Shown here piece by piece: positions 276 to 60,290 of a stretch of 64,000 nucleotides of DNA. Position numbers and translations under genes: made by a program. Where the stretch lies: contig NC_043000.1 in the NCBI RefSeq assembly GCF_006345805.1, forward strand, positions 39,432,001 through 39,496,000. The letters run 5' to 3'. The notes below the pieces were generated by a model. It was not told the origin of the DNA. It did not search any database and worked only from the letters and a program-made list of their open reading frames with translations. The stretch is from Octopus sinensis (lineage: Eukaryota). Numbering within the stretch: the first letter of the stretch is position 1; each line of letters starts with the position of its first letter.

Positions 276-1029
276 TACATATATGTATGTATGTTTGTAT
301 CTATGTCTATGTCTGTGTTTGTTAGTATGTGTGTGTCAATGAAGTTACTAAACTTAATTTAACTCAAGATGAAATTTTACAGTTTTATTAGGTTCAGAAC
401 AGCAGTTGCTGCAAAGCTTACATTTAAGCTTGCCTGCAAATAGTATTTACACCCGAAATTCATTACCACTCCCATTTTTCTTGTAGCTTTCTTTTCTCCG
501 AGTATGACTCATATAAAATCGCGATCCATTTTATTGTGTGTCAGGTAAACTTCTTGAGTTGTCAAACTTGTAAGCCACACACAATGGCCGCATTTGTATA
601 GGAAGGGTAATATTGAAACCGAGTTAAATGATCCTGATTTTCTCCATTCCTCTTACACAGCATTAAATTGCGAGTATTGAGTCATATTTCTTATTAAAAA
701 TTAGTCTGCATAGACTTAGAAGACTGGGTTCAAACCACATTGCTGTGGGTTCAATCCCACTGCGTGGCATTATGAGTGACTGTCATTTGCAACAGCGTCA
801 GGCCGACCCAAGACTTCAAAAACTAGTGTTTTCCTTGCTAAACAACAACACTTTCTATGAGGTAATCACCAACTATAAACAACAAAAAAACACTCAAAAA
901 CCTCACCACCCTCATACTCCAACACGGTCAAGGGCTCACGGAAAAGAAATTTCAATTTTGCTTCTTTCTTTATGCCTCATTTATTTAATTTTAGTTCCAC
1001 GAAATTGTGCACGTACCTTCTATGTTGGC

Positions 1030-1565
1030 CCCTGGTGGGTAATAAAGAAATCGGTATTTCGTCTGCCGCTACGGTCTGAGTTCAAATTCCGCCGAGGTCG
1101 ACTTTGCCTTTCATCCTTTCGGGGTCGATTAAATAAGTACCAGTTACGCACTGGCGTCGATATAATCGACATAATCCATTTCTCTGTCCTTGTTTGTCCT
1201 CTCTGTGTTTAGCCCCTTGTGGGTAGTAAAGAAATAGGTATTTCGTCTGTCATTGAGTTCTGAGTTGAAATTCTGCCGAGGTCGACTTTGCCTTTCATCT
1301 TTTCGGGGTCGATAAATTAAGTACCAGTCACGCACTGGGGTCAATGTAATCGACTTCATCTCTTTGTCTGTCCTTGTTTGTCCCCTCTATGTTTATCTCC
1401 TTGTGGGCAATAAAGAAATAAGAAATAATGAATTATTTCTTATAATTATTTCTACGTACATACGCACATGGGCATAATCGTTCTGTGTTCGAATTCCGCC
1501 GAGGTCGACTTTGTCTTTCAGCCTTTCAGTGTCGATAAATTAAGTACCAGTTGCGTACTGAAAAT
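1030..1565 (+). repeat. Tandem ~190-bp SINE-like units (2 complete plus 1 partial)
   Basis: GAGTT(C/G)AAATT C(C/T)GCCGAGGTCGACTTTGCCTTTCATC...AATAAGTACCAG recurs at ~1075, ~1260 and, more diverged, at ~1490. The start resembles a tRNA B-box (GAGTTCAAATTCC). Antisense fragments of the same family recur in each 3.4-kb unit (e.g. ~25935-26005). Confidence 0.75.
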
Positions 1566-5460: not shown

Positions 5461-5744
5461 TAAAGAGTAAGAGTATAAGAAGTGGACATAAAGATAAAGT
5501 AAGATGAGAATAAAGAGATACAGAAAAATACATGGTGGTTAGAAAGTATGGGTTAGGGCTGATGTTTAGTGAGTGTCATAAATTAAAACTTAATTATCTG
5601 GGGAGTGGAATGGTAGTGGGTGAATGGTTAATTTAAGTTGTGTGCTCTGGTGTGTCTATAGTCTGGAACTGTATTATAATCAATCAACATATATATATAC
5701 TGTTTCAATCTCATTCTGAGATTTAATTATGCTTACTTATATCT

Positions 5745-5950
5745 ATTTGCAAAGGAGCCTTCTCTTTCATCGCTACCTGGTGGTTACCGCCCGTTGACGA
5801 GGGACAAAAATCCCGAAACTAGTTCGAGCGTATCACTCAGGCTTGCGAGGAAGGGATGGCCTCGCTTTGCAAATACTCCAAGGACACAGATATTGTGTCT
5901 AAAGCCAGCTAGAGACGAATATCTCTTGGGGCTATAAAGCTACAGTAACA
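5745..5950 (+). mobile_element. Hammerhead-bearing repeat, uninterrupted copy (Penelope pseudo-LTR- or retrozyme-like)
   Basis: Aligns by eye with the rebuilt junction 9361-9391 + 16507-16650. Shared blocks are GCAAA..TCTC..ATCG..ACC.GGTG.TTACCG..CGTTGACGAG, GTATCACT.AGG, CTTTGC.AATA, TGTGTCTAAAGCCAGCT and TGGGGCTA.AAGC. Confidence 0.8.
5782..5836 (+). ncRNA. Minimal type I hammerhead ribozyme motif (U3 core variant)
   Basis: Stem I CGCCCG(5788-93)/CGAGCG(5825-30), core UUGACGA, stem II GGGA-caaaaa-UCCC, GAAA, palindromic helix III AACTAGTT, predicted site GUU at 5822-5824, outer stem GUGGU/AUCAC. Confidence 0.8.
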
Positions 5951-9290: not shown

Positions 9291-9376
9291 TTTATTATTG
9301 CTTTCAGACAGTTTTTCGAAATCAGCGACAGTGGTTGCTGGGAAAAACATTAAATAAATATTCGCAAATAGGTCTC

Positions 9377-9391
9377 TCCAATCGAAAACCG
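9377..9391 (+). repeat. Target-site duplication copy 1 (TCCAATCGAAAACCG)
   Basis: Identical 15-mer at 9377-9391, 10999-11013 and 16492-16506. Confidence 0.92.
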
Positions 9392-10998
9392 CTTTTTTTT
9401 GTGTCAGAATTTTTGATTGCGTTATTGGTGTGTCGAGGTTGTGAGTTCGAGTTCGTTGGTGAAGGCCGTTGAGACGTGGTGAATTTTTTTTTTTTTTGAG
9501 ATTTTTCGAAAATGCAAGCCCAGGCGTATGCGGGAGCGGCAGGCAGAAGCCTGACTGCGAGTGAACTAGAGCTGGAAGAAGTGGTAGTCGAGAAAGAGAC
9601 TTTGGAAAAATATTTCGACAGCTTGAAGAAGGAAGGTGATTGTGTGAGAGTCACACCGTCTGAAGAAGAAGCAAAAGAAGCGGAGAAACGTATGATAACA
9701 TACAGAACGTGGAGCGTGGCTTCAAAGAAAATAGAAGTGGCAGAGACGGAGGAAATAGAGAAATGTCTGCAGGGAATTGAGGGAGAACCTACCTTTTACA
9801 ACAGAGGAAGAAAATACGCTACAATGGTTGTCCATTTTAAAAAACGAAAATGAAGCGAGAAGGAATGCTACGAAAATTTTGAAATCTGAAAGATGGACAT
9901 TATTACCAAGTTACTGCGGAAAGAGGGCAGTAAGAATAAGAATCGGTAGGATTTCGCCGGAGCTTAATATGGAAAGGATTCTAGCGGCAGTGGTTTTCAA
10001 CTGCAAGGAAAGCGTTGAGGTGTTGAAGGTGGAAAGGTCAACAGAAGTAAAGTGGTGGGGATATGCGGTGCAGGTTCTAGTACATATAACCGTGCCAGAC
10101 CTGTACAACATCCCGGAGGAGTTGGTGTTCCCTGATGAGTCACGTCTTAGAGTCGTGGTGGAGGGGAGACCCCAGTGTGTTACAAATGCAAAATAAGAGG
10201 CCACATGAAGGATGTGTCCGCTGGGAGAAGTGCAGGAGAAAACGATAGCACTGGAGGCTTTAACGAAGGAGTGGAAAGATACGTGTGTGGAGGAGGAAAT
10301 CATCACTACAGATAATGTGGAAAGTGGTGAAGAGTTGGAGAAAGAAAATAGAAAAAGAACGCGGGTGGAATCACCACCCAAAGAACAAAAAAAAAAAGAA
10401 GAAAAAATCGAAAAACAATATTACTGACGAGAGGAAAGACCGAACGTGCGAAGGGAGTGATGCAGAAGCAAAAGCAAGTGAACCAGCAAAATTAACAGCA
10501 GAGGAAGAATGGGACAGAAAAATGGAAGAGCAGTTGAAAGTTTGTAAGAGAGGAGGAAGACCCAAAGGAAAGAAACACAGAGTGGTAATGTTATATTTCA
10601 AGGACAAAAATACGGAAAAGATGTTGGCAGGTAGGAAAGGTTTAATTAGAGTAAAGTTGAACCCAGAAACATATGATGACCAGTGGAAGGCGGTAATTGT
10701 GGAGAGAGAGACATTGGAGAAAATGAGATATGATAATAGTGTATGTGAATGGTTATATGTACGTTATGACACTTTGCCAGCTATTGTGGATCAGGAGAGG
10801 TTGATAGAACGACCAGTATAGCAGAACTGTGTTTTAAATGAAGCTGCGAGTTTTGGGGGGCTCGTAATCCGTTCCATCTAATCCATTATAAATATTCATT
10901 TCACTTCATATTTTTCAATTTTTTTATTATACGTACCTCGTGTCCTGATTGTAATGTCCCCTCTTAATTCGGGCCTTAGTGCCTATAATAAAGATAAA
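9392..10998 (+). mobile_element. ORF1-only Tx1/L1-type element (HAL1-like), element A
   Basis: T-rich 5' end. Frameshifted ORF1 at 9512-10821 has blocks homologous to element B ORF1 (KRMITYRTW..EKC, NRGRKYATMVVHF, RVVVEGRP plus a CYKCKIRGH knuckle). No ORF2. The 3' end TGTAATGTCCC...ATAATAAAGATAAA is shared with element B. Confidence 0.8.
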
Positions 10999-11013
10999 TC
11001 CAATCGAAAACCG
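10999..11013 (+). repeat. Target-site duplication copy 2
   Basis: TCCAATCGAAAACCG lies between elements A and B. Confidence 0.92.
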
Positions 11014-11236
11014 GTTTTTTTAAAATTTTTCCTCGGAGTATATCAAATATTTTTCTGTTGCTGCAAATCGTTGTGTGAGTTCGTTTCTGTTTGTCTACTT
11101 TGTTGTGTTACCCGTATAATAATTGTTGACCTGTTTTTGACCCAGTAACTTTCGCCCTTCGGGGTAGAAAATTTATGTGTGTTTTTTTTTGTGTGTGAAC
11201 TCTTAACCTGTATAGGTTATTTTTGAAAAAATTCCC

Positions 11237-12762
11237 TTGTCATTTGTGACAAGTTTTGTGTTGTCTAATATGGAATTAGACTTAAGTTCAAAAAAAGACT
11301 TTCCCGAGATGGGAGAAGGTATAACAACTGTTAAACTAAAGGAAACACAGGCAAAACCCAGTTTTTCAGACGCCGTAGGTGGCGAAGTGGAAGAAATGGA
11401 GGTGTCAATGGAAAGACTATTTAAGTTCAGACCGCTTGTGCAAAAAAGTGGTGAAGAAACACGATTGGTACCGCCCCCTGAGACTATACAGGCAATACGG
11501 GAAAAAATGGTCACCTATAAGGTGTACAACATAAAAGAGAAGCGAATGACCGACATGAAAAACGAAGTGGTCGAAAAATGTATAGCACCAATATGGAGCA
11601 AAGTTCGTCATGTCAACCGAGGTGCAAGAAGCGCTACTATTGAAGCGCATTTTGAGACGGCGGAAGAAGCAAGGCAAATTTCGACGCAAACGTTGAAAAA
11701 TGAGCATATTGGGGTGTAGAACAGCAAAAGTGACACTGGAAGATATACCAAGGGGCTACGACGTGATGTGGGCGGCAACAGCGGTCATTTTTGATGTTGA
11801 ATCAAAATTGACAATTTTGAGTATGAAGAGGAAAATAGCAAAACACTGGAGAGGCCAGCAGCTGGAGATGATTATCCAGGCGGAATATGCGACGCTGGAA
11901 AGCCTACCAGACTGAGTCTTCGTGGGGGAGGGGCACTCCATACGAGTTTCGGTGGAAGGACGCAGGCCCAGATGTTTTAAGTGCGGGAAAAAGGGCTACG
12001 TTCGCTCCGTTTGCACAAAGAAAATAATACGGGCAACCCCCCCACACACACACAAAACGCTGTGAAGAACGCAGAGAGCAGCAAAGTGGAGAACAAAGTA
12101 ACGACTGGCGAAAGCAAGGAAGGAAAAAAAACAGTCGAACTCCAAAAAGGAGGAAGAATAGAACGGAATGCAAAATAAGAAAGGAAAGGAGGAGGAAATT
12201 AATGCAACAAAAACAAATATACAAGAAGAGATGGAATTCACGAACGTGTCGAACAAAAGAAAAAAATCCATCACCCCTGACTCCCCACCCGTAACAAAAA
12301 AAAAAAAACAACGCAGACGAACAAATTAAAAATATTCTCCAATCCCACCCCGGCGGTACTACATTTATAGGCCAGCACTTTAACAAACCCCACCCCGCAA
12401 CTGTAAAAGGGCTTAAACCCAATGAAAAATGTATAGCATACACCACAAGGAACGAGAGAGTAGTAACATATGTGAAAGCAAATACGCAGATCAAGTGCTA
12501 CAAAGCGACCGAGAGGGATGCGGAGTGGCGATATGCAAGTGTCAGCGAAGAAGAATGGAAAAGAAACGTCGTCCAAGAACACGTAAAAGCCGGCTTCATT
12601 AAGGATGTCACCCAGGAGATGATGGCTGGTAAATTACACGTCAGCCCGGAAGCCACACCAACCCAGAGCCCGGTGGCAACGCCGGTGAAACGCCCAGCAG
12701 CTACGGCGAGTGGGGGGGAGGGAGACAGGCAGAAGGAATCTCTCGCAACCGTGAGTAAATAA
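11237..12762 (+). pseudogene. Tx1 ORF1 (RNA-binding, CCHC knuckle), frameshifted
   Basis: Pieces at 11237-11719, 11700-11915, ~11940-12020 (RPRCFKCGKKGYVRSVC, His replaced by Tyr), 11981-12178 and 12472-12762. Confidence 0.75.
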
Positions 12763-12776
12763 TTTTCTTTTTTTCG

Positions 12777-15700
12777 ATGATTAAGTTAGGTTGTATAAAT
12801 GTGCGTGGAATGGGGTCGAAATGGAAACAGGCTTGTTTTCTGGACGACCTCATTTCACATAGAATCGATGTAGCTATTGTTACCGAGTCCAAGATGAAAG
12901 GACCCCAAGAGTTCTCACCACTTCTCAATGGTTATGCGAAATTTATTTCTCCTAGCCGGGAGGGAGGTGCAGGCGTGACAGTTCTTTTCAGGAAGAACTT
13001 GGACTTACAGGTAAGTACTGTCTTTCTGGACCCAGAAGATAGGCTGGTTGTCTTAGATGTGACTCACGTGAGTAAGCAGTCCTTCAGGTTGGTGGCTGTC
13101 TACGCTCCTAATGGACGTGGGCAGACCGGTTTTTATCGGGAACTGGAGCACTTTCTAGTGACGTCCAAAACGGTAGTCTTGGTAGGGGATTTCAACACCA
13201 TTCTCGATGCGTGGGTGGATGGTGTAGGCTCGAGCGATAGGAAGGGGAATCCTGGCCTCAAGGCTCTACTAGCGAGCTTTAATCTAGTAGACCGTTTTCG
13301 ACTGGATGAGCCGAACGTTCCACAGTGGACGTGGAGTAATAACGACGGCTCATGCAGATCGTACATAGATAGAGTATTTGTTAAGGAACGAGATAGGAAT
13401 AGTGTTAGCTGTCCACAATTCTCTGTGGTGCCTTACACGGATCACAAACTTGTGACGTGTGAGGTACAGGTAGATAAATGCCATAGACAAGGTCCCGGGT
13501 ACTGGAAAATGAACAAGTCTATTTTGACTTGTGAAGCTTTCTGTACCCGGATTAAGGAATTAATACAGAGGGCATTATGTGGCACCATCATTAATAATAA
13601 ATGGTGGCTCGCCCTCAAAAGAGCCATCCGTTTGGAGTCCATTAGATTTAGCAAACAGCTAAGTTTAGATAGGACTAGAATAGAGGGCGAATTAGTTAAG
13701 AACTTAGACGAGGCTATGGAATCTGGCTGTGTATCCGGAGTGTTGGCAGCGAGAGCGGTATTGTATCGTCACCTCAACGCCAAACACGAGGGGTGTAGAG
13801 TCAGAGCTAAGTTACGTGCAGGAAAACGAGAAGGTATTAACGTTGCCGGATGGGCCCGTCGTGAAGAGAGTCAGAAGGGCAAAAAGTCCTGTATTATGTC
13901 CTTAACTGACGATCAGGACCGCAAGATCTATGAACAGGAGGAGATGCAGAAGGTCCTTCACCAGCATTTCGCACGGCGGTTTGGGGACGGTGGTCCGCTC
14001 GAGCGTGGTGAGACCTTAAAGGACTTCCTAGCTGGTAGGCCTCGGCTCTCGGCAGGTGAGGCGGAGTGCTGTGAAGGATCGATCTCTCCCGCGGAGAGTT
14101 ATGGCCGAGTGCGCCGGGGAAAAGTCGCCGGGGTTGGATGGTCTGCCCTATGAATTTTATTGTGGTATGCCGGACTTGTTCGGGGACATACTGGCAAGCG
14201 TCTATGCAAACTGGCAACAGAATGGGAGGATTCCTAGCTCTGTGAGTCGGGGAGTTGTGACGCTGGTCCAGAAAGACCCGAGCAAGGGGGACAGTATTAG
14301 TAATTATAGGCCCATAACTCTACTTAATGTAAAGTTTAAGATTTTGGCCAAGGTGTTAGCAAAAAGGTTGACGGCTGTCGTGGAGAAACTTGTCGGGAAG
14401 GCACAAACATGTGCAATCCCAGGCAGGTCGATCCAGGATAATCTTCACCTTCTCCGCTACACTATAGATACGGTCGGGAAATTAGACGGCAAAGGAGGGG
14501 CATTGGTCCATTTAGACCAAAGTAAAGCGTTCGATAGGGTAGACCATCGGTACTTGGCGGCGGTCCTCGGGGCTGCTGTGCTGGGCCTTGGCTTTTGCGG
14601 GTGGATCTCAGCTATGTACAGCGGCATCAAGTCCACAGTCCAGATAAACGGTTACCTAACGGAGCCGTTTTCGATCAAGCGTTCAGTTCGTCAAGGGTGC
14701 CCCTTGTCCCCGCTCCTGTATGTTTTGGCTCTTGAACCATTGCTGCGGAAGCTGGAGAAGCTGGGAGGCAACCCTAGTGAAATCGGATGCGGTAAGTCTG
14801 TTTCTGCCTATACGGATGACGTCACCCTCATCGTGTCCAACGGAACACAGCTACCTCGGGTAGCAGGTGCTCTCCAAAGATACGAAGCCGTGGCAGGGGG
14901 AAAAGTTAACAGGGACAAGTCCATCGGTTTGCGCCTCGGCACCTGGAGGAACAAGCCGATACCGTCCAGTGTTGTTGGACACTGGACGGATGGTCCTGTT
15001 AAATTGCTCGGAGTTTGGTTTGGTCCAGACTCCCAGACGGAGAAGAATTGGAGCGAGGTAACGAGCAAGGTGGATGCCATAGTATGGAAGTGGTCCGGAA
15101 GGCATCTTTCCTTGAAAGGAAGGGCGGAGGTGGCACAGATGTTTATAGCCTCTGTCGTCACCTACCGCCTGACCGTCGTGCCTTGCCCCGATTCGTGGTT
15201 AGACAAGTTGGAACGACTCCTTTTGCGCTTTTTGTGGAAAGAAGGAAAGCCACTTGTGAGACGCTCCGTGTGTTGCCAGGAACCGCTAAAGTGTGGACTG
15301 GGGATGCCTTGGCTAATGATGCGCAAGCATGCGTTGAGGCTGAGACACCTCTGGTGTTACCTGGAGGATGATAAGGTGTGGAGTTCGCTGACAGAGGAAT
15401 TCTTCCCGCGACCGGCCTCTATGGAGGGATTTACACCCGGTCTCATTAAAGGACGTAACCTGACTTCATGGCAGGAGTGCCGACAGGCACTCTGGCTAAT
15501 CCACAAGATGGGCAAGGCCGGCAGCGAGAATACCACCTCGGTGTTCTATAAAGGGCTGGTAGAGGGAAAAAATGACGACGTCCTAGGAAGGGCTCTGGGG
15601 TTCGATGAGGATCAACTCGCCAACCTGTTTAAGAAGACTTTCAGGTCGGGGTATTTGGATAATTACCAAAAATCCCTGACCTGGCAGTGCTATAGGAATG

Positions 15701-16155
15701 CATTACCTGTTCGCGAGAAGTTATCCCGGCACGGAATGTCAGTGCCACCGACGTGTCCAAGATGTTGGTTGGACGATGAAACCGTTCAACACGCTTTTGT
15801 ACAATGTCGGGAGCTGTCAGGCTTGATAAGTTACGTTGAACACGTGTTGTCGCATCTGGGACGAGTACAGCTGTCGGCTGGATCTATGATTAAGATGATA
15901 CCGCCAACTGGACTCTCAAAGGAAGGTAAGGCTTGTTTTTACTGTACAGTGGCAGTATTGAAAGAGTGTGTATGGAGAACTAGAATGGAAGGTCTAGTGA
16001 AAGGGTCCTTTATCTCTGGCCCCGGTTTGTTAAAATACTTCGGATATCATCTGAAGAGCAAGATGGGGTTGGAGAAGAGGAGCCTGCCACAGAAAGAGTA
16101 TATGGAACGTTGTAAGGATGTGATGAGAAAGGTGCGTGAGAGTAACCCAGCTTAA
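12777..16155 (+). CDS. Tx1/L1-type ORF2: AP endonuclease, reverse transcriptase and C-terminal CCHC, with one frameshift near 14090
   Basis: APE motifs: INVRGM, LVGDFN, SYIDRVF, TDHKLV. RT motifs: KSPGLDGLPYEFY, NYRPITLLN, LDQSKAFDRVDH, RQGCPLSPLL, AYTDDVT. C-terminus: CPRC..ETVQHAFVQC. Confidence 0.93.
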
Positions 16156-16491
16156 TCATCGAGGAAAGAAAAAATCAGCTGCTGGGATTTATAGGCTGCC
16201 GGGTTCAAAATTGAAACTGGTACCTCCCATCCCCTTTCACTGTACATAACTGTTTAAAATAAAGTAATAATAATAAAAAATAAAACATAGGCCCTAAAAG
16301 TTCTCGTGATAAAGGCAAAAGTAAGCCACGGTTTCGTTTCAAGGCAAAGTAAGCCAAGTTTTCGTTCAAGTTACATAAAATTTTATTTTCGTAATTTTTA
16401 TAATTTCATTCGAACTCGCATAGCATTTTTGTAATTGTTTTGTCCTGTAATGTCCCAATTCTATAGATCACTTGATCATAATAAAGATAAA

Positions 16492-16506
16492 TCCAATCGA
16501 AAACCG
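16492..16506 (+). repeat. Target-site duplication copy 3
   Basis: TCCAATCGAAAACCG, followed directly by the hammerhead-bearing sequence. Confidence 0.92.
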
Positions 16507-16568
16507 GTGATTACCGTACGTTGACGAGAGGCAAAAAAACCCTCGAAACTATAGTCCGTACGTATCAC
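16507..16568 (+). ncRNA. Minimal type I hammerhead ribozyme motif (U3 core variant)
   Basis: Outer stem GUGAU/AUCAC, stem I CGUACG(16515-20)/CGUACG(16557-62), core UUGACGA, stem II GAGG-caaaaaaac-CCUC, GAAA, palindromic helix III ACTATAGT, predicted site GUC at 16554-16556. Confidence 0.85.
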
Positions 16569-16659
16569 TTAGGTTTTCGAGAGGGGATGACCTCCCTTTG
16601 CGAATATCAGAAGGTCACAGAAAGTGTGTCTAAAGCCAGCTGGGGCTAAAAGCTTCAAT

Positions 16660-17578
16660 TTATTAAATGTATTTCATAAATATATTATATTGATATTTAT
16701 AATATTTATGTAAGTAATAATGAACTAATTAATTTATTTATTTATCATTTTATGTGTATATATTTATTGATAGAGTAAATTTTAGACTTTAATTACTATA
16801 TTTGTTGATTATAATTTAGATACTTATTTTAAGATATTTTATAATTATTTGATGTGAACTTAACTCTAAAAATATGAATAGTGATTATGTTATTAAATAA
16901 GTTGTTAATTAGATATTGGACTATAACTGAGTTAAGGATATTCGAGAGTTTATTATGTTTTTTAAAGCCTTATTATATCTTCATAGATAAATACATATTT
17001 CTATCATTTTTTACCTTAAAAATAAATATTTAACATAATAAATGGGTTGTGTGAAATAGTCCTAATGTTTTAAGTTTCTAATTTAGAGAATGGAGTTTTT
17101 TTTATAAAAAAAGTTATTATTTTATTTAGTTCTTAATAAATATTGTTTAACTCTATTTGCTTATTTATTTAACAATTATCATTAATCTGAAGATTGACTA
17201 TAATTTTAGTTCGAATTTATTTCAACTGAATTTAAACTTAATTGTAATTCGAATTTAATTATAGCCATGAAACGTACATAGTGTTTTAACTTACTATATT
17301 ATATTTATCATTCTTTTTATACCTTTTGAAAAGAAAATACTATATATTATATATTATATATTATATTATTATATATTTATATTATATATATATATTATAT
17401 TAATTATATTTATATTATTTGTTATTTATGTCTATCACTGTTTGAGTTGCATAATAGTGGTTTTATCTCTAATTCATATTTTATATATTTTTACTGTGAA
17501 ATTTGATTTAATACTAAATTGAATTTTCCCCTGTAAGTTTGGAGCTATACTCCCTAATATTATTATTATATATATATG
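16660..17578. repeat. Very AT-rich unclassified interspersed repeat
   Basis: The 3' end (TTTTCCCCTGTAAGTTTGG...CCCTAATATT(T)ATTATATAT) recurs at ~62040-62240. Confidence 0.55.
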
Positions 17579-41173: not shown

Positions 41174-44100
41174 TAGTTTTATTTTTATAGCGTGCTTTCA
41201 CTTCACTACCGAGCACAGCTCTGTGTGCCTTGGGTATGTGCTGTGATTTATTGTGATGCTCATGGTCATTGTAGGAAAGTGTTCTGCGTAGGATGTGTGC
41301 AGTGCCTAGTATGCAATTTTCTGTATTTATATGTGTTTGTAAGTCCTGGTGTTTTTGTTATGTATTTGTCTGAATATTTTTTTATCATGCCTAATGCACC
41401 TACTATGATAGGAATTGTTTCTCTATTTTCAGATTCTACATTCTAGTTACCTCTATTTCCAGGTCTTTGTATTTTGAGAGTTTCTCCATTTCTTTTAGAG
41501 ACACGTTGTCATCAGCCGGTATTGATACATCAATAGAAAGCATTTTTTTTTCTTTATGATCTCTGACAACTATATCTGGTGTGTTGGCCTTATTTCTCTA
41601 TCTGTGTGTATCGGCATATCCCAGAGTATGGTTGCTTTCTCGTTTTCTGTGACCTTTTCTGGTGTGTGCCTATACCATCTTTTTTTCTGTTGTTATTCCA
41701 TAATGTTGGCATAGCTTCCAATGTATGTAGGTTCCAACTATGTCATGTCTGTGAATATATTCCTTCTTAGCCAAGACTGGGCAGCTAGAGATAATATGAT
41801 TTATTGTTTCTTGTCCATCTCCACATATTCTGCAGTTACTTGTAATATTTCTTTCATTACATGTTTTTGGTAATTTCTTGTGGGGAGGCTTTGGTCTTGT
41901 GCTGCAATTAAAATCCCTCTGTTTCTGCTTTGAGTCCTGAGCTTCTCAACCATTGCTGGGATTTTTCTTTGTCTATTTCTTTTGCGTTTAGTTTAGTCCA
42001 GTATTTACCATGAAGGGGCTTTTCTTGCCATCATTTTATCATGTTCGTTGCTGTTCTATTTTTAGTTTGGATTTCATTTGTTTTATAGCTTTTTTTTTTT
42101 CTTCTTCTTCTTCTTCTTCTTCTTCATGTTTATTAGGTGGTATGATTTCTTGTTTGTATTTGTCAGCTTCCTTAAATACTGAGAACAGTTTTTTGTTTTG
42201 CTCGTGTTTTGCCGCTATCTGGATCAGTTTTCCTTCCTTCTGAAGTAGATATTTTTGCAGTCCTATGTGGTTATTTTATAGTAGTTTTCCAGCTGTATAA
42301 GGCCTCTACCCACCTTCTATACGTTGTATATATAGTCTTTCTATATCAGATTTTGGGTGATGCAATCCTAGATCCTGTCATTATTTTTCTTGTTTTCCTA
42401 TCTATTTTGGTCAGTTCATTTCGTGTCCAGTTTAAGGATATTGTAGCTGTAACTTATAACTGGGACAGCTAAAGTGTTGATACCTATTATCTGTTTTTAG
42501 CATTGAGCTCTGTTTTTAGTATTGATCTAACTCGTCTATAGTATTCTTTTTTTATTTTCTCTTTCATTTGTGTGTGTTGTGTCTTATCTAGTTCATGGAT
42601 TCCTAAGTATTTGTAAGTTTGGCTTTGATCTAATTCTTTTATTTCATTGGTTTTATCTAGTGTGATGTTGTTACTCTTAACTAGTTTTCCTCTTTTCAGG
42701 GTTACTTTGGCGCATTTTTCTAATCCAAATTTCATATTTATTTCTTTGGTAAATCCATGAACTGTCTTTAATAGTATTTCCATCTGTTTGTCATTTGCAG
42801 CGTATAGTTTTAGGTCATCCATATATAAAAGGTGGCTGATCGTTTTGCCGTAACATTTATATCCGCATCCAGTTCTATTTAGCATATCAGATAGAGGTGA
42901 CAGTGCCAAGCAGAAAAGGAGTGGAAAGAGCGTGTCTCCCTGGAATATTCCTCTTCTAATGGGGATGTCTTTGGTTTTCATGAGTCCCTCTTTTGTTTGG
43001 AGGTGTAGGACTGTTTGCCATTTATTCATAGAGTGCTCTATGAATTTTATGATTGTTGGTGCTACTTTGTTAATGGCTAGTGTTTCGAGGATCCATGTAT
43101 GGGGGATGCTATCAAACGCCTTTTGTAGTCAATCCAGGCCATACTGAGGCCTTTCTTCTTTCTGTGGCTGTCTTCAGTTATGGCTTTATTAAATCATTAG
43201 TTGATCTTTACAGCCATATGAGCCTTTGCGGCATCCTTTCTGCTCTTCTCTGGGAACAGTTTTTTTTCGTCCAGGTGCTTGTTCAGCCTTTGTGATATCA
43301 CTGCAGTAAATGCCTTGAACATAGTAGGGAGGCAGGTTATTGGTCTGTAGTTTTCTGGTTTTTTTTCTTTTCATTTGATTTGGGAATTAAGATGGTTTTC
43401 CCCTTCGTGAGCCATTCAGGCATTGTCTCTGGCTCTGCTAGTACTTTGTTAAAGTTTTCAGCCAGCTTTTTGTGCATTCCTGTTAGATATTTCAACCAGA
43501 AGTTGGGGATCTTGTCATGCCCAGGTGCCTTCCAGTTGCTTAGTCTTTGCAGTGCCTGGGTGACCTCTTCAGTTGTTATGGGGGTCCAAAGTTGTTCAGA
43601 TGCCGAGTTTGTTATTCTGATACTCCTTTTTTTGGTGGTTCGTTCGCCGACCATATTTCTCCCCAGAATTCTTCCAATTCTTCTGCCGTTGTGCTGCAGT
43701 GACTTCTATTTTATTTTTCCCAGTTCTTGGTAGAACTTTTTGGGGTTGGTGTTGAACTTTTTGTTTTCTTCAAAGAAGCGTTGGCGTTTCTTGTACCGGC
43801 GGATCCTTTTGTGCTTTGGCAAGGATATCTTGCTTCAGCTTTCTTTTATTTCACGCAAATCTTTCTCTGTGATGTTATATTTGTGGAGTATTTTTGTTCT
43901 CTTTTTGTTGCTCAGTAGCGTTGATTGTTTGCTGATTTCATTAAGAATCGACAGGTCTTTTCTAATTTTTTTTATTTTGCTTTGGATGTTATTTATCCAC
44001 AGGGTTTGTTTGGGTGCTGGTACTCCTGTTTGGGCGGGTTTGGGTGAGTATCCAGCTTCTTTTGTGGCTGCAGTGGCTGCTGCGTATATTAGTTGATTCA

Positions 44101-58689: not shown

Positions 58690-60290
58690 GTAAGCCCCCG
58701 GTCCATCAGTAATTACTGCAGAGATGCTCAAAATATCTGGCAGTGTCGGCTATAGCCTAGTCACACGTAAAGTTAACCAGGTGATACACGAAGGAGTCAT
58801 ACCCAATGACTGGTGTAGCAGTATAATAGTCAACTGCTACAAAGGTAAAGGTGATGCTTTAGATACAAATAATTACAGTGGTATCAAGCTGTTGGATCAG
58901 GTAATGAAGGTTACGGAGACGGCCATAGCCCAACTAATTAGGGAGAGAGTCAGATTGGATGAGATGCAGTTTGGTTTCGTGTCAGGGAAAAACACCACTG
59001 ATGCTATATTCCTGGTAAGACAGCTGCAGGAAAAATACCATGCCAAAGATAAGCCCCTGTACCGGGCTTTCGTTGACATGGAGGAAGCCTTTGACAGGGT
59101 CCCCCGATCCATTATCTGGTGATCATTGAGAAAACTAGGGATAGCGAATGGTTAGTGAGAGGCGTGCAAGCCATGTACAGGGACGCTGTCACTAAGGTGA
59201 GGGTTGGCAACGAGTACACTGAAGAATTCAGGGTAGAGGTAGGGTTCCACCAGGGTTCAGTCCTCAGCCCCCTCCTATTTATCATAGTCCTCCAGCAATA
59301 ACGGAGGAATTTAAGACAGGATGCCCCTGGGACTTCCTTTATGCTGATGACCCTGTTCTAATTGCTGAGTCACTATCAGAACTACAGGAAAAGTTTCAGG
59401 TGTGGAAACAAGGATTAGAATCGAAGGGCCTTAGAGTCAACCTAGCTAAGACCAAAGTCCTAATAAGTAGGAAGGCAGGCAAACCACAAATCTCTTCAGG
59501 TAGATGGCCCTGCTCGATCTGTAGTAGAGGCGTAGGTAGAAACTCTATAAGATGTACCCAGTGTAAGCTATGGACACATAAGTGGTGCAGTAATATCAAA
59601 GGAAGGCTAACGGGGAAGATAGTTTTGTATGTGGCAGATGCTCGGGAGCAATAAGCACTGAAAATGTGCAGAGAACAACTGCCACATTCCAGGGAGGTAA
59701 ACTAGAAGTAGTTGATAGCTTCCGTTACCTAGGTGACCAGGTCAGTAGCGGGGGAGGGTGTGCTGAAAGTGTAGCTGCTAGAATAAAAATAGCTTGGGCA
59801 AAGTTCAGTGAGCTCTTACCCCTGCTGGTGACAAAGGGCCTCTCGCTCAGAGTAAAAGGTAGACTGTATGACGCTTGTGTACGAACAGCCATGCTACATG
59901 GCAGTGAAACATGGGCTGTGACTGCTGAGGACATGCATAAGCTCGCAAGGAATGAAGCCAGTATGATCCGATGGATGTGTAATGTCAGTGTGCATACTCG
60001 ACAGAGTGTGAGTACCATGGGAGAAATGTTGGACCTAAGAAGCATCAGATGTGGTGTGCAAGAGAGACGACTACGCTGGTATGGTCATGTGGCGAGAATG
60101 GATGAGGATAGATGTGTGAAAAAGTGCCACACCCTAGCGGTTGAGTGAACCTGTGGAAGAAGTAGACCCTGGAAGACCTGGGATGAAGTGGTGAAGCACG
60201 ACCTTCGAAATTTAGACCTCACTAAAGAAATGACTAGTGACCGAGACTTTTGGAAATATGCTGTTCGTGAGAAGACCCGGCAAGCCAAAT
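58690..60290 (+). mobile_element. 5'-truncated RTE-clade LINE (RT and C-terminus) with stops
   Basis: IPNDWCSSIIVNCYKGKGDAL..NYSGIKLL, AFVDMEEAFDRVPR, GFHQGSVLSPLLF, LYADD, FRYLGDQV, ERRLRWYGHVARM. Confidence 0.92.

What the first reader, a model, noticed from the sequence alone, without database searches (positions are those of the whole stretch)
9361..16650. Two different Tx1-clade retroelements inserted at the same site just upstream of a hammerhead ribozyme: a candidate new target specificity
SEEN: the 15-mer TCCAATCGAAAACCG occurs at 9377, 10999 and 16492, bracketing element A (9392-10998) and element B (11014-16491). Deleting both elements and the extra 15-mers gives ...CGCAAATAGGTCTCTCCAATCGAAAACCGGTGATTACCGTACGTTGACGAGAGG... 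This aligns collinearly with the uninterrupted paralogue ...TGCAAAGGAGCCTTCTCTTTCATCGCTACCTGGTGGTTACCGCCCGTTGACGAGGG... at 5748-5803, and the homology continues ~100 bp past the ribozyme. The insertion point abuts the ribozyme's outer stem. A and B have clearly divergent ORF1s, so these are two families using one site. ESTABLISHED: Tx1-clade elements are often sequence-specific (Keno/U2 snRNA, Dewa/tRNA arrays, Kibi and Koshi/microsatellites, Xenopus Tx1L/Tx1D DNA transposon), and Penelope-like elements carry minimal type I hammerheads in their pseudo-LTRs. INFERENCE: this is a Tx1 lineage specialised to parasitise a hammerhead-bearing Penelope or retrozyme repeat. I do not recall that target class being described.
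Basis: partly seen in the sequence, partly recalled or inferred. Interest (0 to 1): 0.92.

Follow-up and report, generated by a model that had tools for sequence, protein, structure and literature searches.

The report
Two LINEs stacked in a hammerhead repeat
Two different LINE-type jumping genes landed one after the other at exactly the same 15-base spot of a small hammerhead-ribozyme-like repeat, which fits a site-seeking LINE with a new kind of target, but only this one occupied site could be examined.

Summary
TCCAATCGAAAACCG occurs exactly three times (9377, 10999, 16492) and brackets element A (9392-10998) and element B (11014-16491). Joining the outer flanks restores a ~190-bp repeat that is collinear with an uninterrupted copy at 5744-5943, so the 15-mer is target DNA, a target-site duplication made twice. 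B is an L1/Tx1-group LINE (damaged ORF1, APE, RT, zf-RVT, one ORF2 frameshift). A has ORF1 only and shares B's 3' tail, so one enzyme could have moved both; "two families, one site" is weaker than claimed. The target folds into a long hairpin tipped by a Penelope-type minimal type I hammerhead. Both copies carry U instead of the invariant C3 and fall below Rfam's threshold. The insertion sits in the 5' arm of the extended helix I and leaves the ribozyme motif intact downstream. I could not test genome-wide site specificity, because the source genome and close relatives are absent from every searchable collection. Distant relatives (40-48% ORF2 identity) often form head-to-tail arrays with a short, TSD-length spacer. 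Two of these families share one junction 14-mer, but solo copies at unrelated sites also exist and none lies near a hammerhead. Tx1-clade elements that target other transposons, including tandem insertions sandwiching a TSD, are already published. Verdict: plausible new target for a known kind of element, moderate interest.

The parts
9358..9376 (+). Left flank (U) of the interrupted target repeat, ATATTCGCAAATAGGTCTC. It forms the outer 5' arm of the long hairpin.
   Evidence: Collinear with 5744-5763 of the intact paralogue. It pairs with 16585-16607 in the fold of the joined flanks.
9377..9391 (+). Target-site duplication, copy 1 (TCCAATCGAAAACCG)
   Evidence: Homologous to TTTCATCGCTACCTG (5764-5778) in the empty paralogue.
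9392..10998 (+). Element A, a 1607-bp ORF1-only non-autonomous LINE derivative. 5'UTR 9392-9511. ORF1 in shifted frames: 9512-9853, 9777-10196, 10285-10821. CCHC-knuckle remnant about 10163-10216. 3'UTR 10822-10998, ending in a small hairpin plus ATAATAAAGATAAA.
   Evidence: ORF list. tblastx against B's ORF1, combined E 1e-23. No APE or RT. Tail shared with B.
10999..11013 (+). Target-site duplication, copy 2, sandwiched between A and B
11014..16491 (+). Element B, a 5478-bp L1/Tx1-group LINE with a full 5' end. ORF1 11237-12762 is disrupted (frameshift near 11700, in-frame stop at 11913, further shifts); CCHC remnant 11958-12011. ORF2 APE 12777-14096. A 1-bp frameshift lies at about 14096-14098. 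RT plus zf-RVT 14098-16155. 3'UTR 16156-16491 ends in ATAATAAAGATAAA.
   Evidence: Pfam Exo_endo_phos 3.6e-12, RVT_1 1.4e-29, zf-RVT 1.9e-9. Frame switch mapped with homologues. Human L1 ORF2p is the closest solved structure.
16492..16506 (+). Target-site duplication, copy 3
16507..16568 (+). Hammerhead-like type I motif. Helix I GTGATTACCGTACG/CGTACGTATCAC; core UUGACGA (U at position 3); helix II GAGG/CCTC with an A-rich loop; GAAA; 2-bp helix III with a palindromic loop (ACUAUAGU). The predicted cleavage site is after GUC, between 16556 and 16557.
   Evidence: Sequence, fold, motif scan. No Rfam hit even at E<=10 for this copy. The paralogous motif scores 33.2 bits against HH9.
16569..16656 (+). 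Remainder of the target repeat. The 3' arm of the extended helix (16572-16607) pairs with the 15-mer and with the left flank. A ~50-bp tail ends in GCTGGGGCTAAAAGCTTC.
5744..5943 (+). Uninterrupted paralogue of the target repeat (an empty site). The hammerhead-like motif is at 5776-5846. The 15-mer equivalent, 5764-5778, matches in 9 of 15 positions.
   Evidence: blastn; Rfam Hammerhead_HH9 33.2 bits, E 7e-7, gathering score 52; alignment; fold

Best explanation
A ~190-bp interspersed repeat that encodes a Penelope-type minimal hammerhead-like hairpin was hit twice, at the same staggered nick pair, by target-primed reverse transcription. One event inserted B, an L1/Tx1-group LINE. The other inserted A, an ORF1-only derivative that carries the same 3' tail and was therefore probably mobilised in trans by a B-type ORF2. 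Each event duplicated the 15 bp between the bottom-strand nick (GGTCTC|TCCAAT) and the top-strand nick (AAACCG|GTGATT), giving TSD-A-TSD-B-TSD. The 15 bp is the only target sequence common to both events whichever order they came in. I therefore infer that integration is directed by that sequence. The directing agent could be the endonuclease, or annealing of read-through element RNA that carries the downstream 15-mer. On this reading the machinery prefers this position of the repeat, and each insertion regenerates its own target. Shown: the anatomy, the TSD nature of the 15-mer, two independent events, and the domain content. Inferred: sequence-directed targeting, trans-mobilisation of A, and a multicopy target.
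For: Three exact 15-mers against 0.08 expected by chance. The joined flanks are collinear with an intact paralogue across the 15-mer. The 15-mer base-pairs with downstream repeat sequence in both copies, with 6 compensatory and 6 one-sided changes among 49 pairs, so it is target and not element. A and B share no nucleotide similarity beyond the 14-nt tail, which rules out a duplication. Both begin right after the 15-mer with N-T7-8 5' ends, as do relatives. B carries APE+RT+zf-RVT. The same architecture is published for the Tx1 clade: SINEU-3/Tx1-Mar in Mariner-N4_AMi has a 16-bp TSD and 'tandem insertions ... sandwiching a TSD' (PMC4494074). In relatives, two families only 48% identical abut the same 14-mer TTGACTATGCTGGA at independent loci, and arrays with 15-16-bp spacers occur.
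Against: Only one occupied site exists. The only other copy of the repeat in 64 kb is empty, although its 15-mer differs at 6 of 15 positions. No other copy of A, B or the repeat could be fetched. Families related to B also have solo copies at unrelated sites (L007, L015, L019), so any preference in the clade is not strict. No relative locus contains a hammerhead.
Confidence: 0.6

Rival explanations
1. Junction re-use without any specificity for the hammerhead repeat. The first element landed in the repeat by chance. The second was drawn to the resident copy: either its endonuclease or RNA recognised the resident's tail/TSD junction, or the resident's own locus was re-invaded. A fixed 15-bp stagger then reproduced the same TSD automatically.
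For: Head-to-tail arrays with a TSD-length spacer are common among relatives, and the spacers differ: L005/6 CCTCGTCGACAACCC, L008 ~TGTCAGTATACTGAAAAGAGGA, L016 ~TTGAAGGAAATACGAGACT, and the L017/18 array. A and B share the 3' tail. A SINE in the window also sits in direct head-to-tail tandem.
Against: Neither the left flank nor the 15-mer resembles the tail, so tail microhomology cannot explain the nick position. A and B are different families, so at least one arrived from another locus and still hit the exact boundaries. The arrays in relatives may themselves mark specific targets, given the 14-mer shared by two families.
Confidence: 0.25
2. The A-TSD-B block was not built here. It arose at another occupied repeat, or by unequal recombination between two repeats that each carried one element. 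It then reached this locus as a unit, by read-through retrotransposition of a dimer transcript or by segmental duplication.
For: Read-through and dimer transcripts are known for LINEs (established knowledge). The three 15-mers are identical.
Against: This still requires both elements to have sat at the same site of the repeat, so it presupposes site preference. Nothing in the window shows a duplicated block.
Confidence: 0.08
3. The 15-mer is part of each element's own terminus, or the arrangement is an assembly artefact, and is not a TSD.
For: Copies 2 and 3 directly follow identical 14-nt tails.
Against: Copy 1 is preceded by repeat sequence and not by a tail. The intact paralogue carries the homologous 15-mer between the same flanks. 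The 15-mer pairs with downstream repeat sequence, with compensatory changes.
Confidence: 0.04

Closest known systems
Tx1-Mar LINEs and SINEU-3 in crocodilians, which target the DNA transposon Mariner-N4_AMi (Kojima 2015, PMC4494074)
   Same: L1/Tx1-group machinery inserts at a fixed position of another interspersed repeat, with a ~16-bp TSD. Sequential insertions produce tandem copies sandwiching a TSD. A non-autonomous partner uses the same site.
   Different: The target here is a hammerhead-like Penelope or retrozyme-type repeat, not a DNA transposon. The preference is documented there on hundreds of copies and here on one site.
Xenopus Tx1L inserted in the piggyBac-type transposon Tx1D; Keno (U2 snRNA), Kibi/Koshi (microsatellites), Tx1-8_Crp/Tx1-4_AMi (LTR retrotransposons), Tx1-9_AMi (Harbinger)
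   Same: APE-type LINEs with sequence-preferring integration into multicopy sequences, including other transposable elements (PMC4494074).
   Different: None of the listed targets is a ribozyme-bearing repeat. B's membership of the Tx1 clade was not tested phylogenetically.
HAL1 (half-L1) and other internally deleted non-autonomous LINEs
   Same: Element A keeps the 5'UTR, ORF1 and the 3' tail but has no ORF2, as HAL1 does relative to L1 (established knowledge; Bao and Jurka 2010 as cited in PMC4494074).
   Different: A's ORF1 is only 22-39% identical to B's, so A does not derive from this B family. No other A copy could be found.
Penelope-like element pseudo-LTR hammerheads, and metazoan non-LTR retrozymes
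   Same: Type I topology, an A-rich loop 2, a 2-bp helix III with a palindromic loop (the dimer-type minimal hammerhead), AT-rich or (TA)n surroundings, and a rod-like fold (PMC8557442, PMC7229834).
   Different: C3 is U in both copies. The copies are solitary and not tandem, and no PLE ORF is adjacent. The Rfam score is below the gathering threshold.
R2 in 28S rDNA with its 5' HDV-like ribozyme
   Same: A site-specific LINE whose co-transcript is processed by a self-cleaving ribozyme. This is a conceptual parallel for the novel reading.
   Different: In R2 the ribozyme belongs to the element and lies at its 5' end. Here the ribozyme-like motif belongs to the target, lies 3' of the element, and is probably crippled.

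Membership tests
L1/Tx1-group non-LTR retrotransposon (element B) | ORF2 with an N-terminal APE endonuclease, a central RT and a C-terminal zinc-binding domain | tested here: met
   Pfam Exo_endo_phos 3.6e-12, RVT_1 1.4e-29, zf-RVT 1.9e-9. Against PDB sequences, the RT scores 145 bits to human L1 ORF2p and 81 bits to R2. The APE is closest to the L1 endonuclease.
L1/Tx1-group non-LTR retrotransposon (element B) | An upstream ORF1 with a nucleic-acid-binding module (CCHC knuckle), and target-site duplications | tested here: met
   CxxC knuckle remnants are present in both A and B ORF1, though degenerate. The TSD is an exact 15 bp. No Pfam hit was found for the ORF1 pieces.
Tx1 clade in the strict sense | The RT domain groups with Tx1 reference families rather than with L1 in a phylogeny | not testable with these tools
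   No labelled Tx1 or L1 reference set could be obtained, and hits carry no clade names. Indirect evidence only: Octopus vulgaris L1-group families are annotated L1-Tx1 (PMC13282606), and the best hits are octopod.
Target-specific LINE | Independent copies at different loci share the same flanking target sequence | not testable with these tools
   The source genome is not indexed. No homologues were found for A's ORF or B's ORF1. The metagenome, genome and viral scans were empty or gave chance hits.
Target-specific LINE | The same nick positions are re-used by independent insertion events | tested here: met
   Two unrelated elements are bracketed by three identical 15-mers.
Hammerhead ribozyme, type I (Rfam HH9 / Penelope minimal type) | The conserved catalytic core CUGANGA ... 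GAAA | tested here: not met
   Both copies read UUGACGA ... GAAA, so the invariant C3 is U. GAAA and the remaining core bases are present.
Hammerhead ribozyme, type I (Rfam HH9 / Penelope minimal type) | Three helices around the core, an open helix I, and a cleavable H17 | tested here: met
   Folds and the HH9 alignment over model positions 1-77. Helix III is 2 bp with palindromic ACUAUAGU or ACUAGU. H17 is C or U.
Hammerhead ribozyme, type I (Rfam HH9 / Penelope minimal type) | A score at or above Rfam's gathering threshold | tested here: not met
   No gathering-level hit in the window. The paralogue scores 33.2 bits against a threshold of 52. The interrupted copy has no hit at E<=10.
Hammerhead ribozyme, type I (Rfam HH9 / Penelope minimal type) | Self-cleavage activity | not testable with these tools
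   This needs an in vitro transcription and cleavage assay. From established mutational work, C3U is expected to be strongly deleterious.
Penelope-like element pseudo-LTR or non-LTR retrozyme (the target repeat) | Adjacent to a PLE RT/GIY-YIG ORF, or arranged as tandem units each carrying a hammerhead | tested here: not met
   Both copies are solitary ~190-bp units. No PLE ORF lies next to them. They could still be solo or 5'-truncated remnants.

The most novel reading that the evidence does not exclude
An L1/Tx1-type LINE lineage homes to a fixed position in the extended helix I of a Penelope-type hammerhead repeat and deliberately leaves the ribozyme intact about 65 nt downstream. Read-through element transcripts would then be trimmed by the target's own ribozyme and end in target sequence, and that sequence would guide the next insertion by annealing. 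In short, a LINE that borrows another retroelement's ribozyme for 3'-end formation and homing.
Probability: 0.07. Interest if true: 0.8.

Novelty: new member of a known kind. Interest (0 to 1): 0.42.

Why it matters
If genome-wide data confirm it, hammerhead-bearing Penelope or retrozyme-type repeats join the list of targets chosen by Tx1-type LINEs. That list already includes snRNA, tRNA and 5S genes, microsatellites, DNA transposons and LTR elements. It would be another natural example of APE endonuclease retargeting, which is of interest for understanding and engineering site-directed retrotransposition. It would also be a case of one retroelement class nesting in the structured RNA module of another. 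The position just outside an intact ribozyme motif raises a testable question: does the target's ribozyme process LINE read-through transcripts? If the association is a one-off, this is an ordinary nested-transposon locus.

Tried and rejected
1. Rfam at gathering threshold gave nothing for the whole window or for eight relative loci.
2. Searches for other copies of A and B all failed:
- A's 178-aa ORF and B's ORF1 have no homologues in the 5.8-billion-protein set.
- Five window ORFs are not in the collection by exact look-up.
- B's best RT homologues are only 61% identical (3-kb contig, no flanks) and 56% identical (Argonauta hians; its flanks have no hammerhead and no 15-mer).
3. A metagenome scan for the 20-mer spanning the 15-mer/hammerhead junction returned six high-GC bacterial chance matches.
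4. A viral-contig scan for the hammerhead core, and genome and viral scans with B's RT, returned nothing.
5. An apparent shared core, TCGA(A/C)AACC, between the window 15-mer and the L005 array spacer was dropped as probable coincidence once other arrays showed unrelated spacers.
6. Other window matches to TGTAATGTCCC belong to unrelated repeats.
7. Cluster look-ups meant to obtain organism or clade names for relatives timed out twice.
8. No supplement with Tx1 reference sequences was available, so no RT tree was built.
9. Literature searches found no paper describing a Tx1 or LINE with a hammerhead or Penelope target.
Full report
**Observation.** TCCAATCGAAAACCG occurs exactly at 9377, 10999 and 16492 on the + strand. 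With up to two mismatches allowed, only 0.08 matches are expected in shuffled sequence. The flanks were read directly. The first copy is preceded by ...ATATTCGCAAATAGGTCTC. The second and third are each preceded by the same 14 nt, ATAATAAAGATAAA, which has no other perfect match in the window. Identity among the three copies ends at the 15-mer edges, apart from a shared GT after copies 2 and 3, so B's duplication could be 17 bp.

**The two elements.** B (11014-16491, 5478 bp) has a disrupted ORF1 at 11237-12762. Its ORF2 has Pfam matches to the APE endonuclease (3.6e-12), the reverse transcriptase (1.4e-29) and zf-RVT (1.9e-9). Alignment with full-length homologues shows a single frame switch in ORF2 at about 14096-14098 and no stop codons otherwise. 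As assembled the copy is therefore defective but young-looking. Among solved structures the RT is closest to human LINE-1 ORF2p (145 bits) and well ahead of R2 (81 bits); the endonuclease is closest to the L1 endonuclease. That places B in the L1/Tx1 group. I could not test strict Tx1-clade membership because no labelled reference set was available. Indirectly, its best homologues are octopod (61% to an unnamed NCBI assembly, 56% to Argonauta hians), and Octopus vulgaris L1-group families are annotated L1-Tx1 (PMC13282606).

A (9392-10998, 1607 bp) has a 5'UTR, a frameshifted ORF1 and a 3'UTR, but no ORF2. Its ORF1 is homologous to B's at 22-39% identity, and both contain CCHC-knuckle remnants. 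A and B share no nucleotide similarity except the 3' end, which in both is TGTAATGTCCC, a small hairpin, then ATAATAAAGATAAA. A is thus a HAL1-like non-autonomous element carrying the tail that a B-type reverse transcriptase would recognise. "Two families use one site" may therefore reduce to one enzyme acting on two RNAs.

**The target.** Joining 9353-9391 to 16507-16670 gives a sequence collinear with 5735-5950 across the left flank, the 15-mer and the right flank (82% column identity). Only these two copies of the repeat exist in the 64 kb. Both fold into a ~125-nt hairpin. Comparing the 49 predicted pairs between the two copies gives:
- 32 pairs unchanged
- 6 pairs changed on one side
- 6 pairs changed on both sides with pairing kept
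- 5 pairs broken

The tip of the hairpin is a type I hammerhead-like motif. The intact paralogue matches Rfam Hammerhead_HH9 over the whole model at 33.2 bits (E 7e-7), below the gathering score of 52. The interrupted copy gets no Rfam hit at all. Helix III is 2 bp with a palindromic loop (ACUAUAGU or ACUAGU), the hallmark of the minimal, dimer-forming hammerheads of Penelope-like elements. Those hammerheads sit in PLE pseudo-LTRs (PMC8557442) and in metazoan retrozymes (PMC7229834). Both copies read UUGACGA where the invariant core is CUGANGA. From established mutational work, C3U should cripple cleavage, so I call the motif hammerhead-like and not a shown ribozyme. The copies are solitary and have no PLE ORF nearby.

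The 15-mer lies on the 5' arm of the extended helix I and pairs with GGTTTTCGA at 16572-16580. The top-strand nick (16506|16507) coincides with the first base of the HH9 helix I. The motif therefore stays intact downstream of B.

**What the arrangement means.** The 15-mer is present between the same flanks in the empty paralogue and pairs with downstream repeat sequence. It is therefore target DNA duplicated at insertion, not an element terminus. A and B are unrelated at the nucleotide level, so TSD-A-TSD-B-TSD cannot be a tandem duplication. It requires two retrotransposition events using the same bottom-strand and top-strand nick positions. Whichever element came first, the only original sequence shared by both events is the 15-mer, together with either the left or the right flank. 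This is the architecture Kojima described for Tx1-mobilised SINEU-3 in Mariner-N4_AMi: a 16-bp TSD and "tandem SINEU-3 insertions ... sandwiching a TSD", generated by sequential insertion (PMC4494074). The same paper lists Tx1-clade targets that include DNA transposons, LTR retrotransposons, satellites, microsatellites and small RNA genes.

**Testing site specificity.** The decisive test is to tabulate the flanks of other A and B copies, and it could not be done. The window's ORFs are not in the protein and contig collection. A's ORF and B's ORF1 have no homologues. B's closest relatives have either no flank or flanks without a hammerhead or the 15-mer. DNA scans of the metagenome, genome and viral collections gave only chance bacterial matches or nothing.

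I therefore examined more distant relatives (40-48% ORF2 identity) on marine or host-associated metagenome contigs. Head-to-tail arrays with a short spacer are frequent:
- L005/L006 has three copies, with spacers CCTCGTCGACAACCC and TTCTCTGCGACAACCC.
- L008 and L017/L018 have near-identical copies on "circular" contigs.
- L016 has two copies.

Two families only 48% identical abut the same 14-mer, TTGACTATGCTGGA. In L007 it is the TSD on both sides of a solo copy. In the L017/L018 array it lies 24 nt after each tail, and the similarity extends upstream of the 14-mer. This parallels A and B and suggests target preference in the clade.

Solo copies at unrelated sites also exist:
- L015 lies inside a Gypsy element with a 22-bp TSD, and an empty paralogue is on the same contig.
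- L019 is 5'-truncated.
- L007 and L005/6 are 87.6% identical in nucleotide sequence but use different sites.

None of these loci contains a hammerhead. The relatives raise the prior for sequence-directed integration. They also show that such preference is not strict and is not tied to hammerheads across the clade.

**Mechanism and rivals.** My best explanation (confidence 0.6) is sequence-directed TPRT at this position of the repeat. The direction could be encoded in the endonuclease or come from annealing of read-through RNA that carries the 15-mer. Each insertion regenerates the target, and A is mobilised in trans.

The main rival (0.25) is re-use of a resident element's junction after a chance first hit. 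The arrays with unrelated spacers in relatives are compatible with this. Against it, neither the left flank nor the 15-mer resembles the element tail, and at least one of two different families must have arrived from elsewhere and hit the exact boundaries.

Minor rivals are a composite built at another occupied repeat (0.08), which itself presupposes site preference, and a terminus or assembly artefact (0.04), which the paralogue alignment largely excludes.

**Novelty and verdict.** No paper in the searchable library links Tx1 or any LINE to a hammerhead or Penelope target, so the target would be new. The kind of system, a Tx1-type LINE nesting at a fixed site of another repeat with a non-autonomous partner and TSD sandwiches, is well described. 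I rate it a new member of a known kind, resting on a single locus, with moderate interest (0.42). The most novel reading not excluded is that the LINE exploits the target's ribozyme to trim read-through transcripts and to home. It is speculative (0.07), and the U3 core in both copies argues against it.

Noticed in passing
window 1019-1420: Two full copies plus a partial copy of a ~184-bp tRNA-like SINE sit directly head to tail with no spacer. Its tail, CCCTTGTGGGTAATAAAGAAAT, nearly matches the 3' end of the Argonauta hians LINE that is B's 56% relative (L001 ~10625-10650, CCCTTGTGGCTAATAAAGAAAT). This looks like a LINE/SINE tail partnership, and the SINE copies appear to insert at a resident copy's tail.
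   Followed up: partly
L007 1963 and 8504; L017 2383 and 9204; L018 2384 and 9204: In ENA sample ERZ21867824, two LINE families with only 48% ORF2 identity abut the same 14-mer, TTGACTATGCTGGA. For one it is the TSD of a solo copy. For the other it lies in the spacer region of a tandem array. This is a likely shared integration target of unknown identity in an unidentified host.
   Followed up: partly
L005+L006, L008, L016, L017/L018: Relatives of B form head-to-tail arrays (periods ~6.5-6.8 kb) separated by 15-22 bp. Several lie on contigs the assembler marked as circular, so they behave like LINE-unit satellites.
   Followed up: partly
L015 700-807, 7373-7419, 11217-11349: A relative of B is inserted in a Gypsy-type LTR retrotransposon with a 22-bp TSD (ACACCTGTGAACTGCGTGTCTT). 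The uninterrupted paralogous site is on the same contig, giving a clean filled-versus-empty pair.
   Followed up: yes
window 5794-5800 and 16521-16527: Both hammerhead-like motifs carry U at the invariant core position C3 (UUGACGA). The change is shared by two copies that are only ~76-82% identical, so it is probably a family trait and not a random hit.
   Followed up: partly
window 26135, 39555, 48864 (minus strand); 57653 (minus) and 58258 (plus): There are three copies of an unrelated interspersed repeat, and an inverted duplicate pair about 600 bp apart. Both were found through chance similarity to TGTAATGTCCC.
   Followed up: no
window 42487-43029 (minus strand) and ~59164-59319 (plus strand): Fragments of other reverse transcriptases, about 28-33% identical to B's RT over 52-115 aa. 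The fragment at 42487-43029 matches RVT_1 at 2.6e-13; the one near 59164-59319 was seen only as a tblastn hit. They are remnants of other retroelement families.
   Followed up: partly
protein P0048: A protein labelled as coming from a Herbaspirillum metagenome-assembled genome is 48% identical to the C-terminal part of B's ORF2. It is very probably a eukaryotic LINE fragment contaminating a bacterial bin.
   Followed up: no
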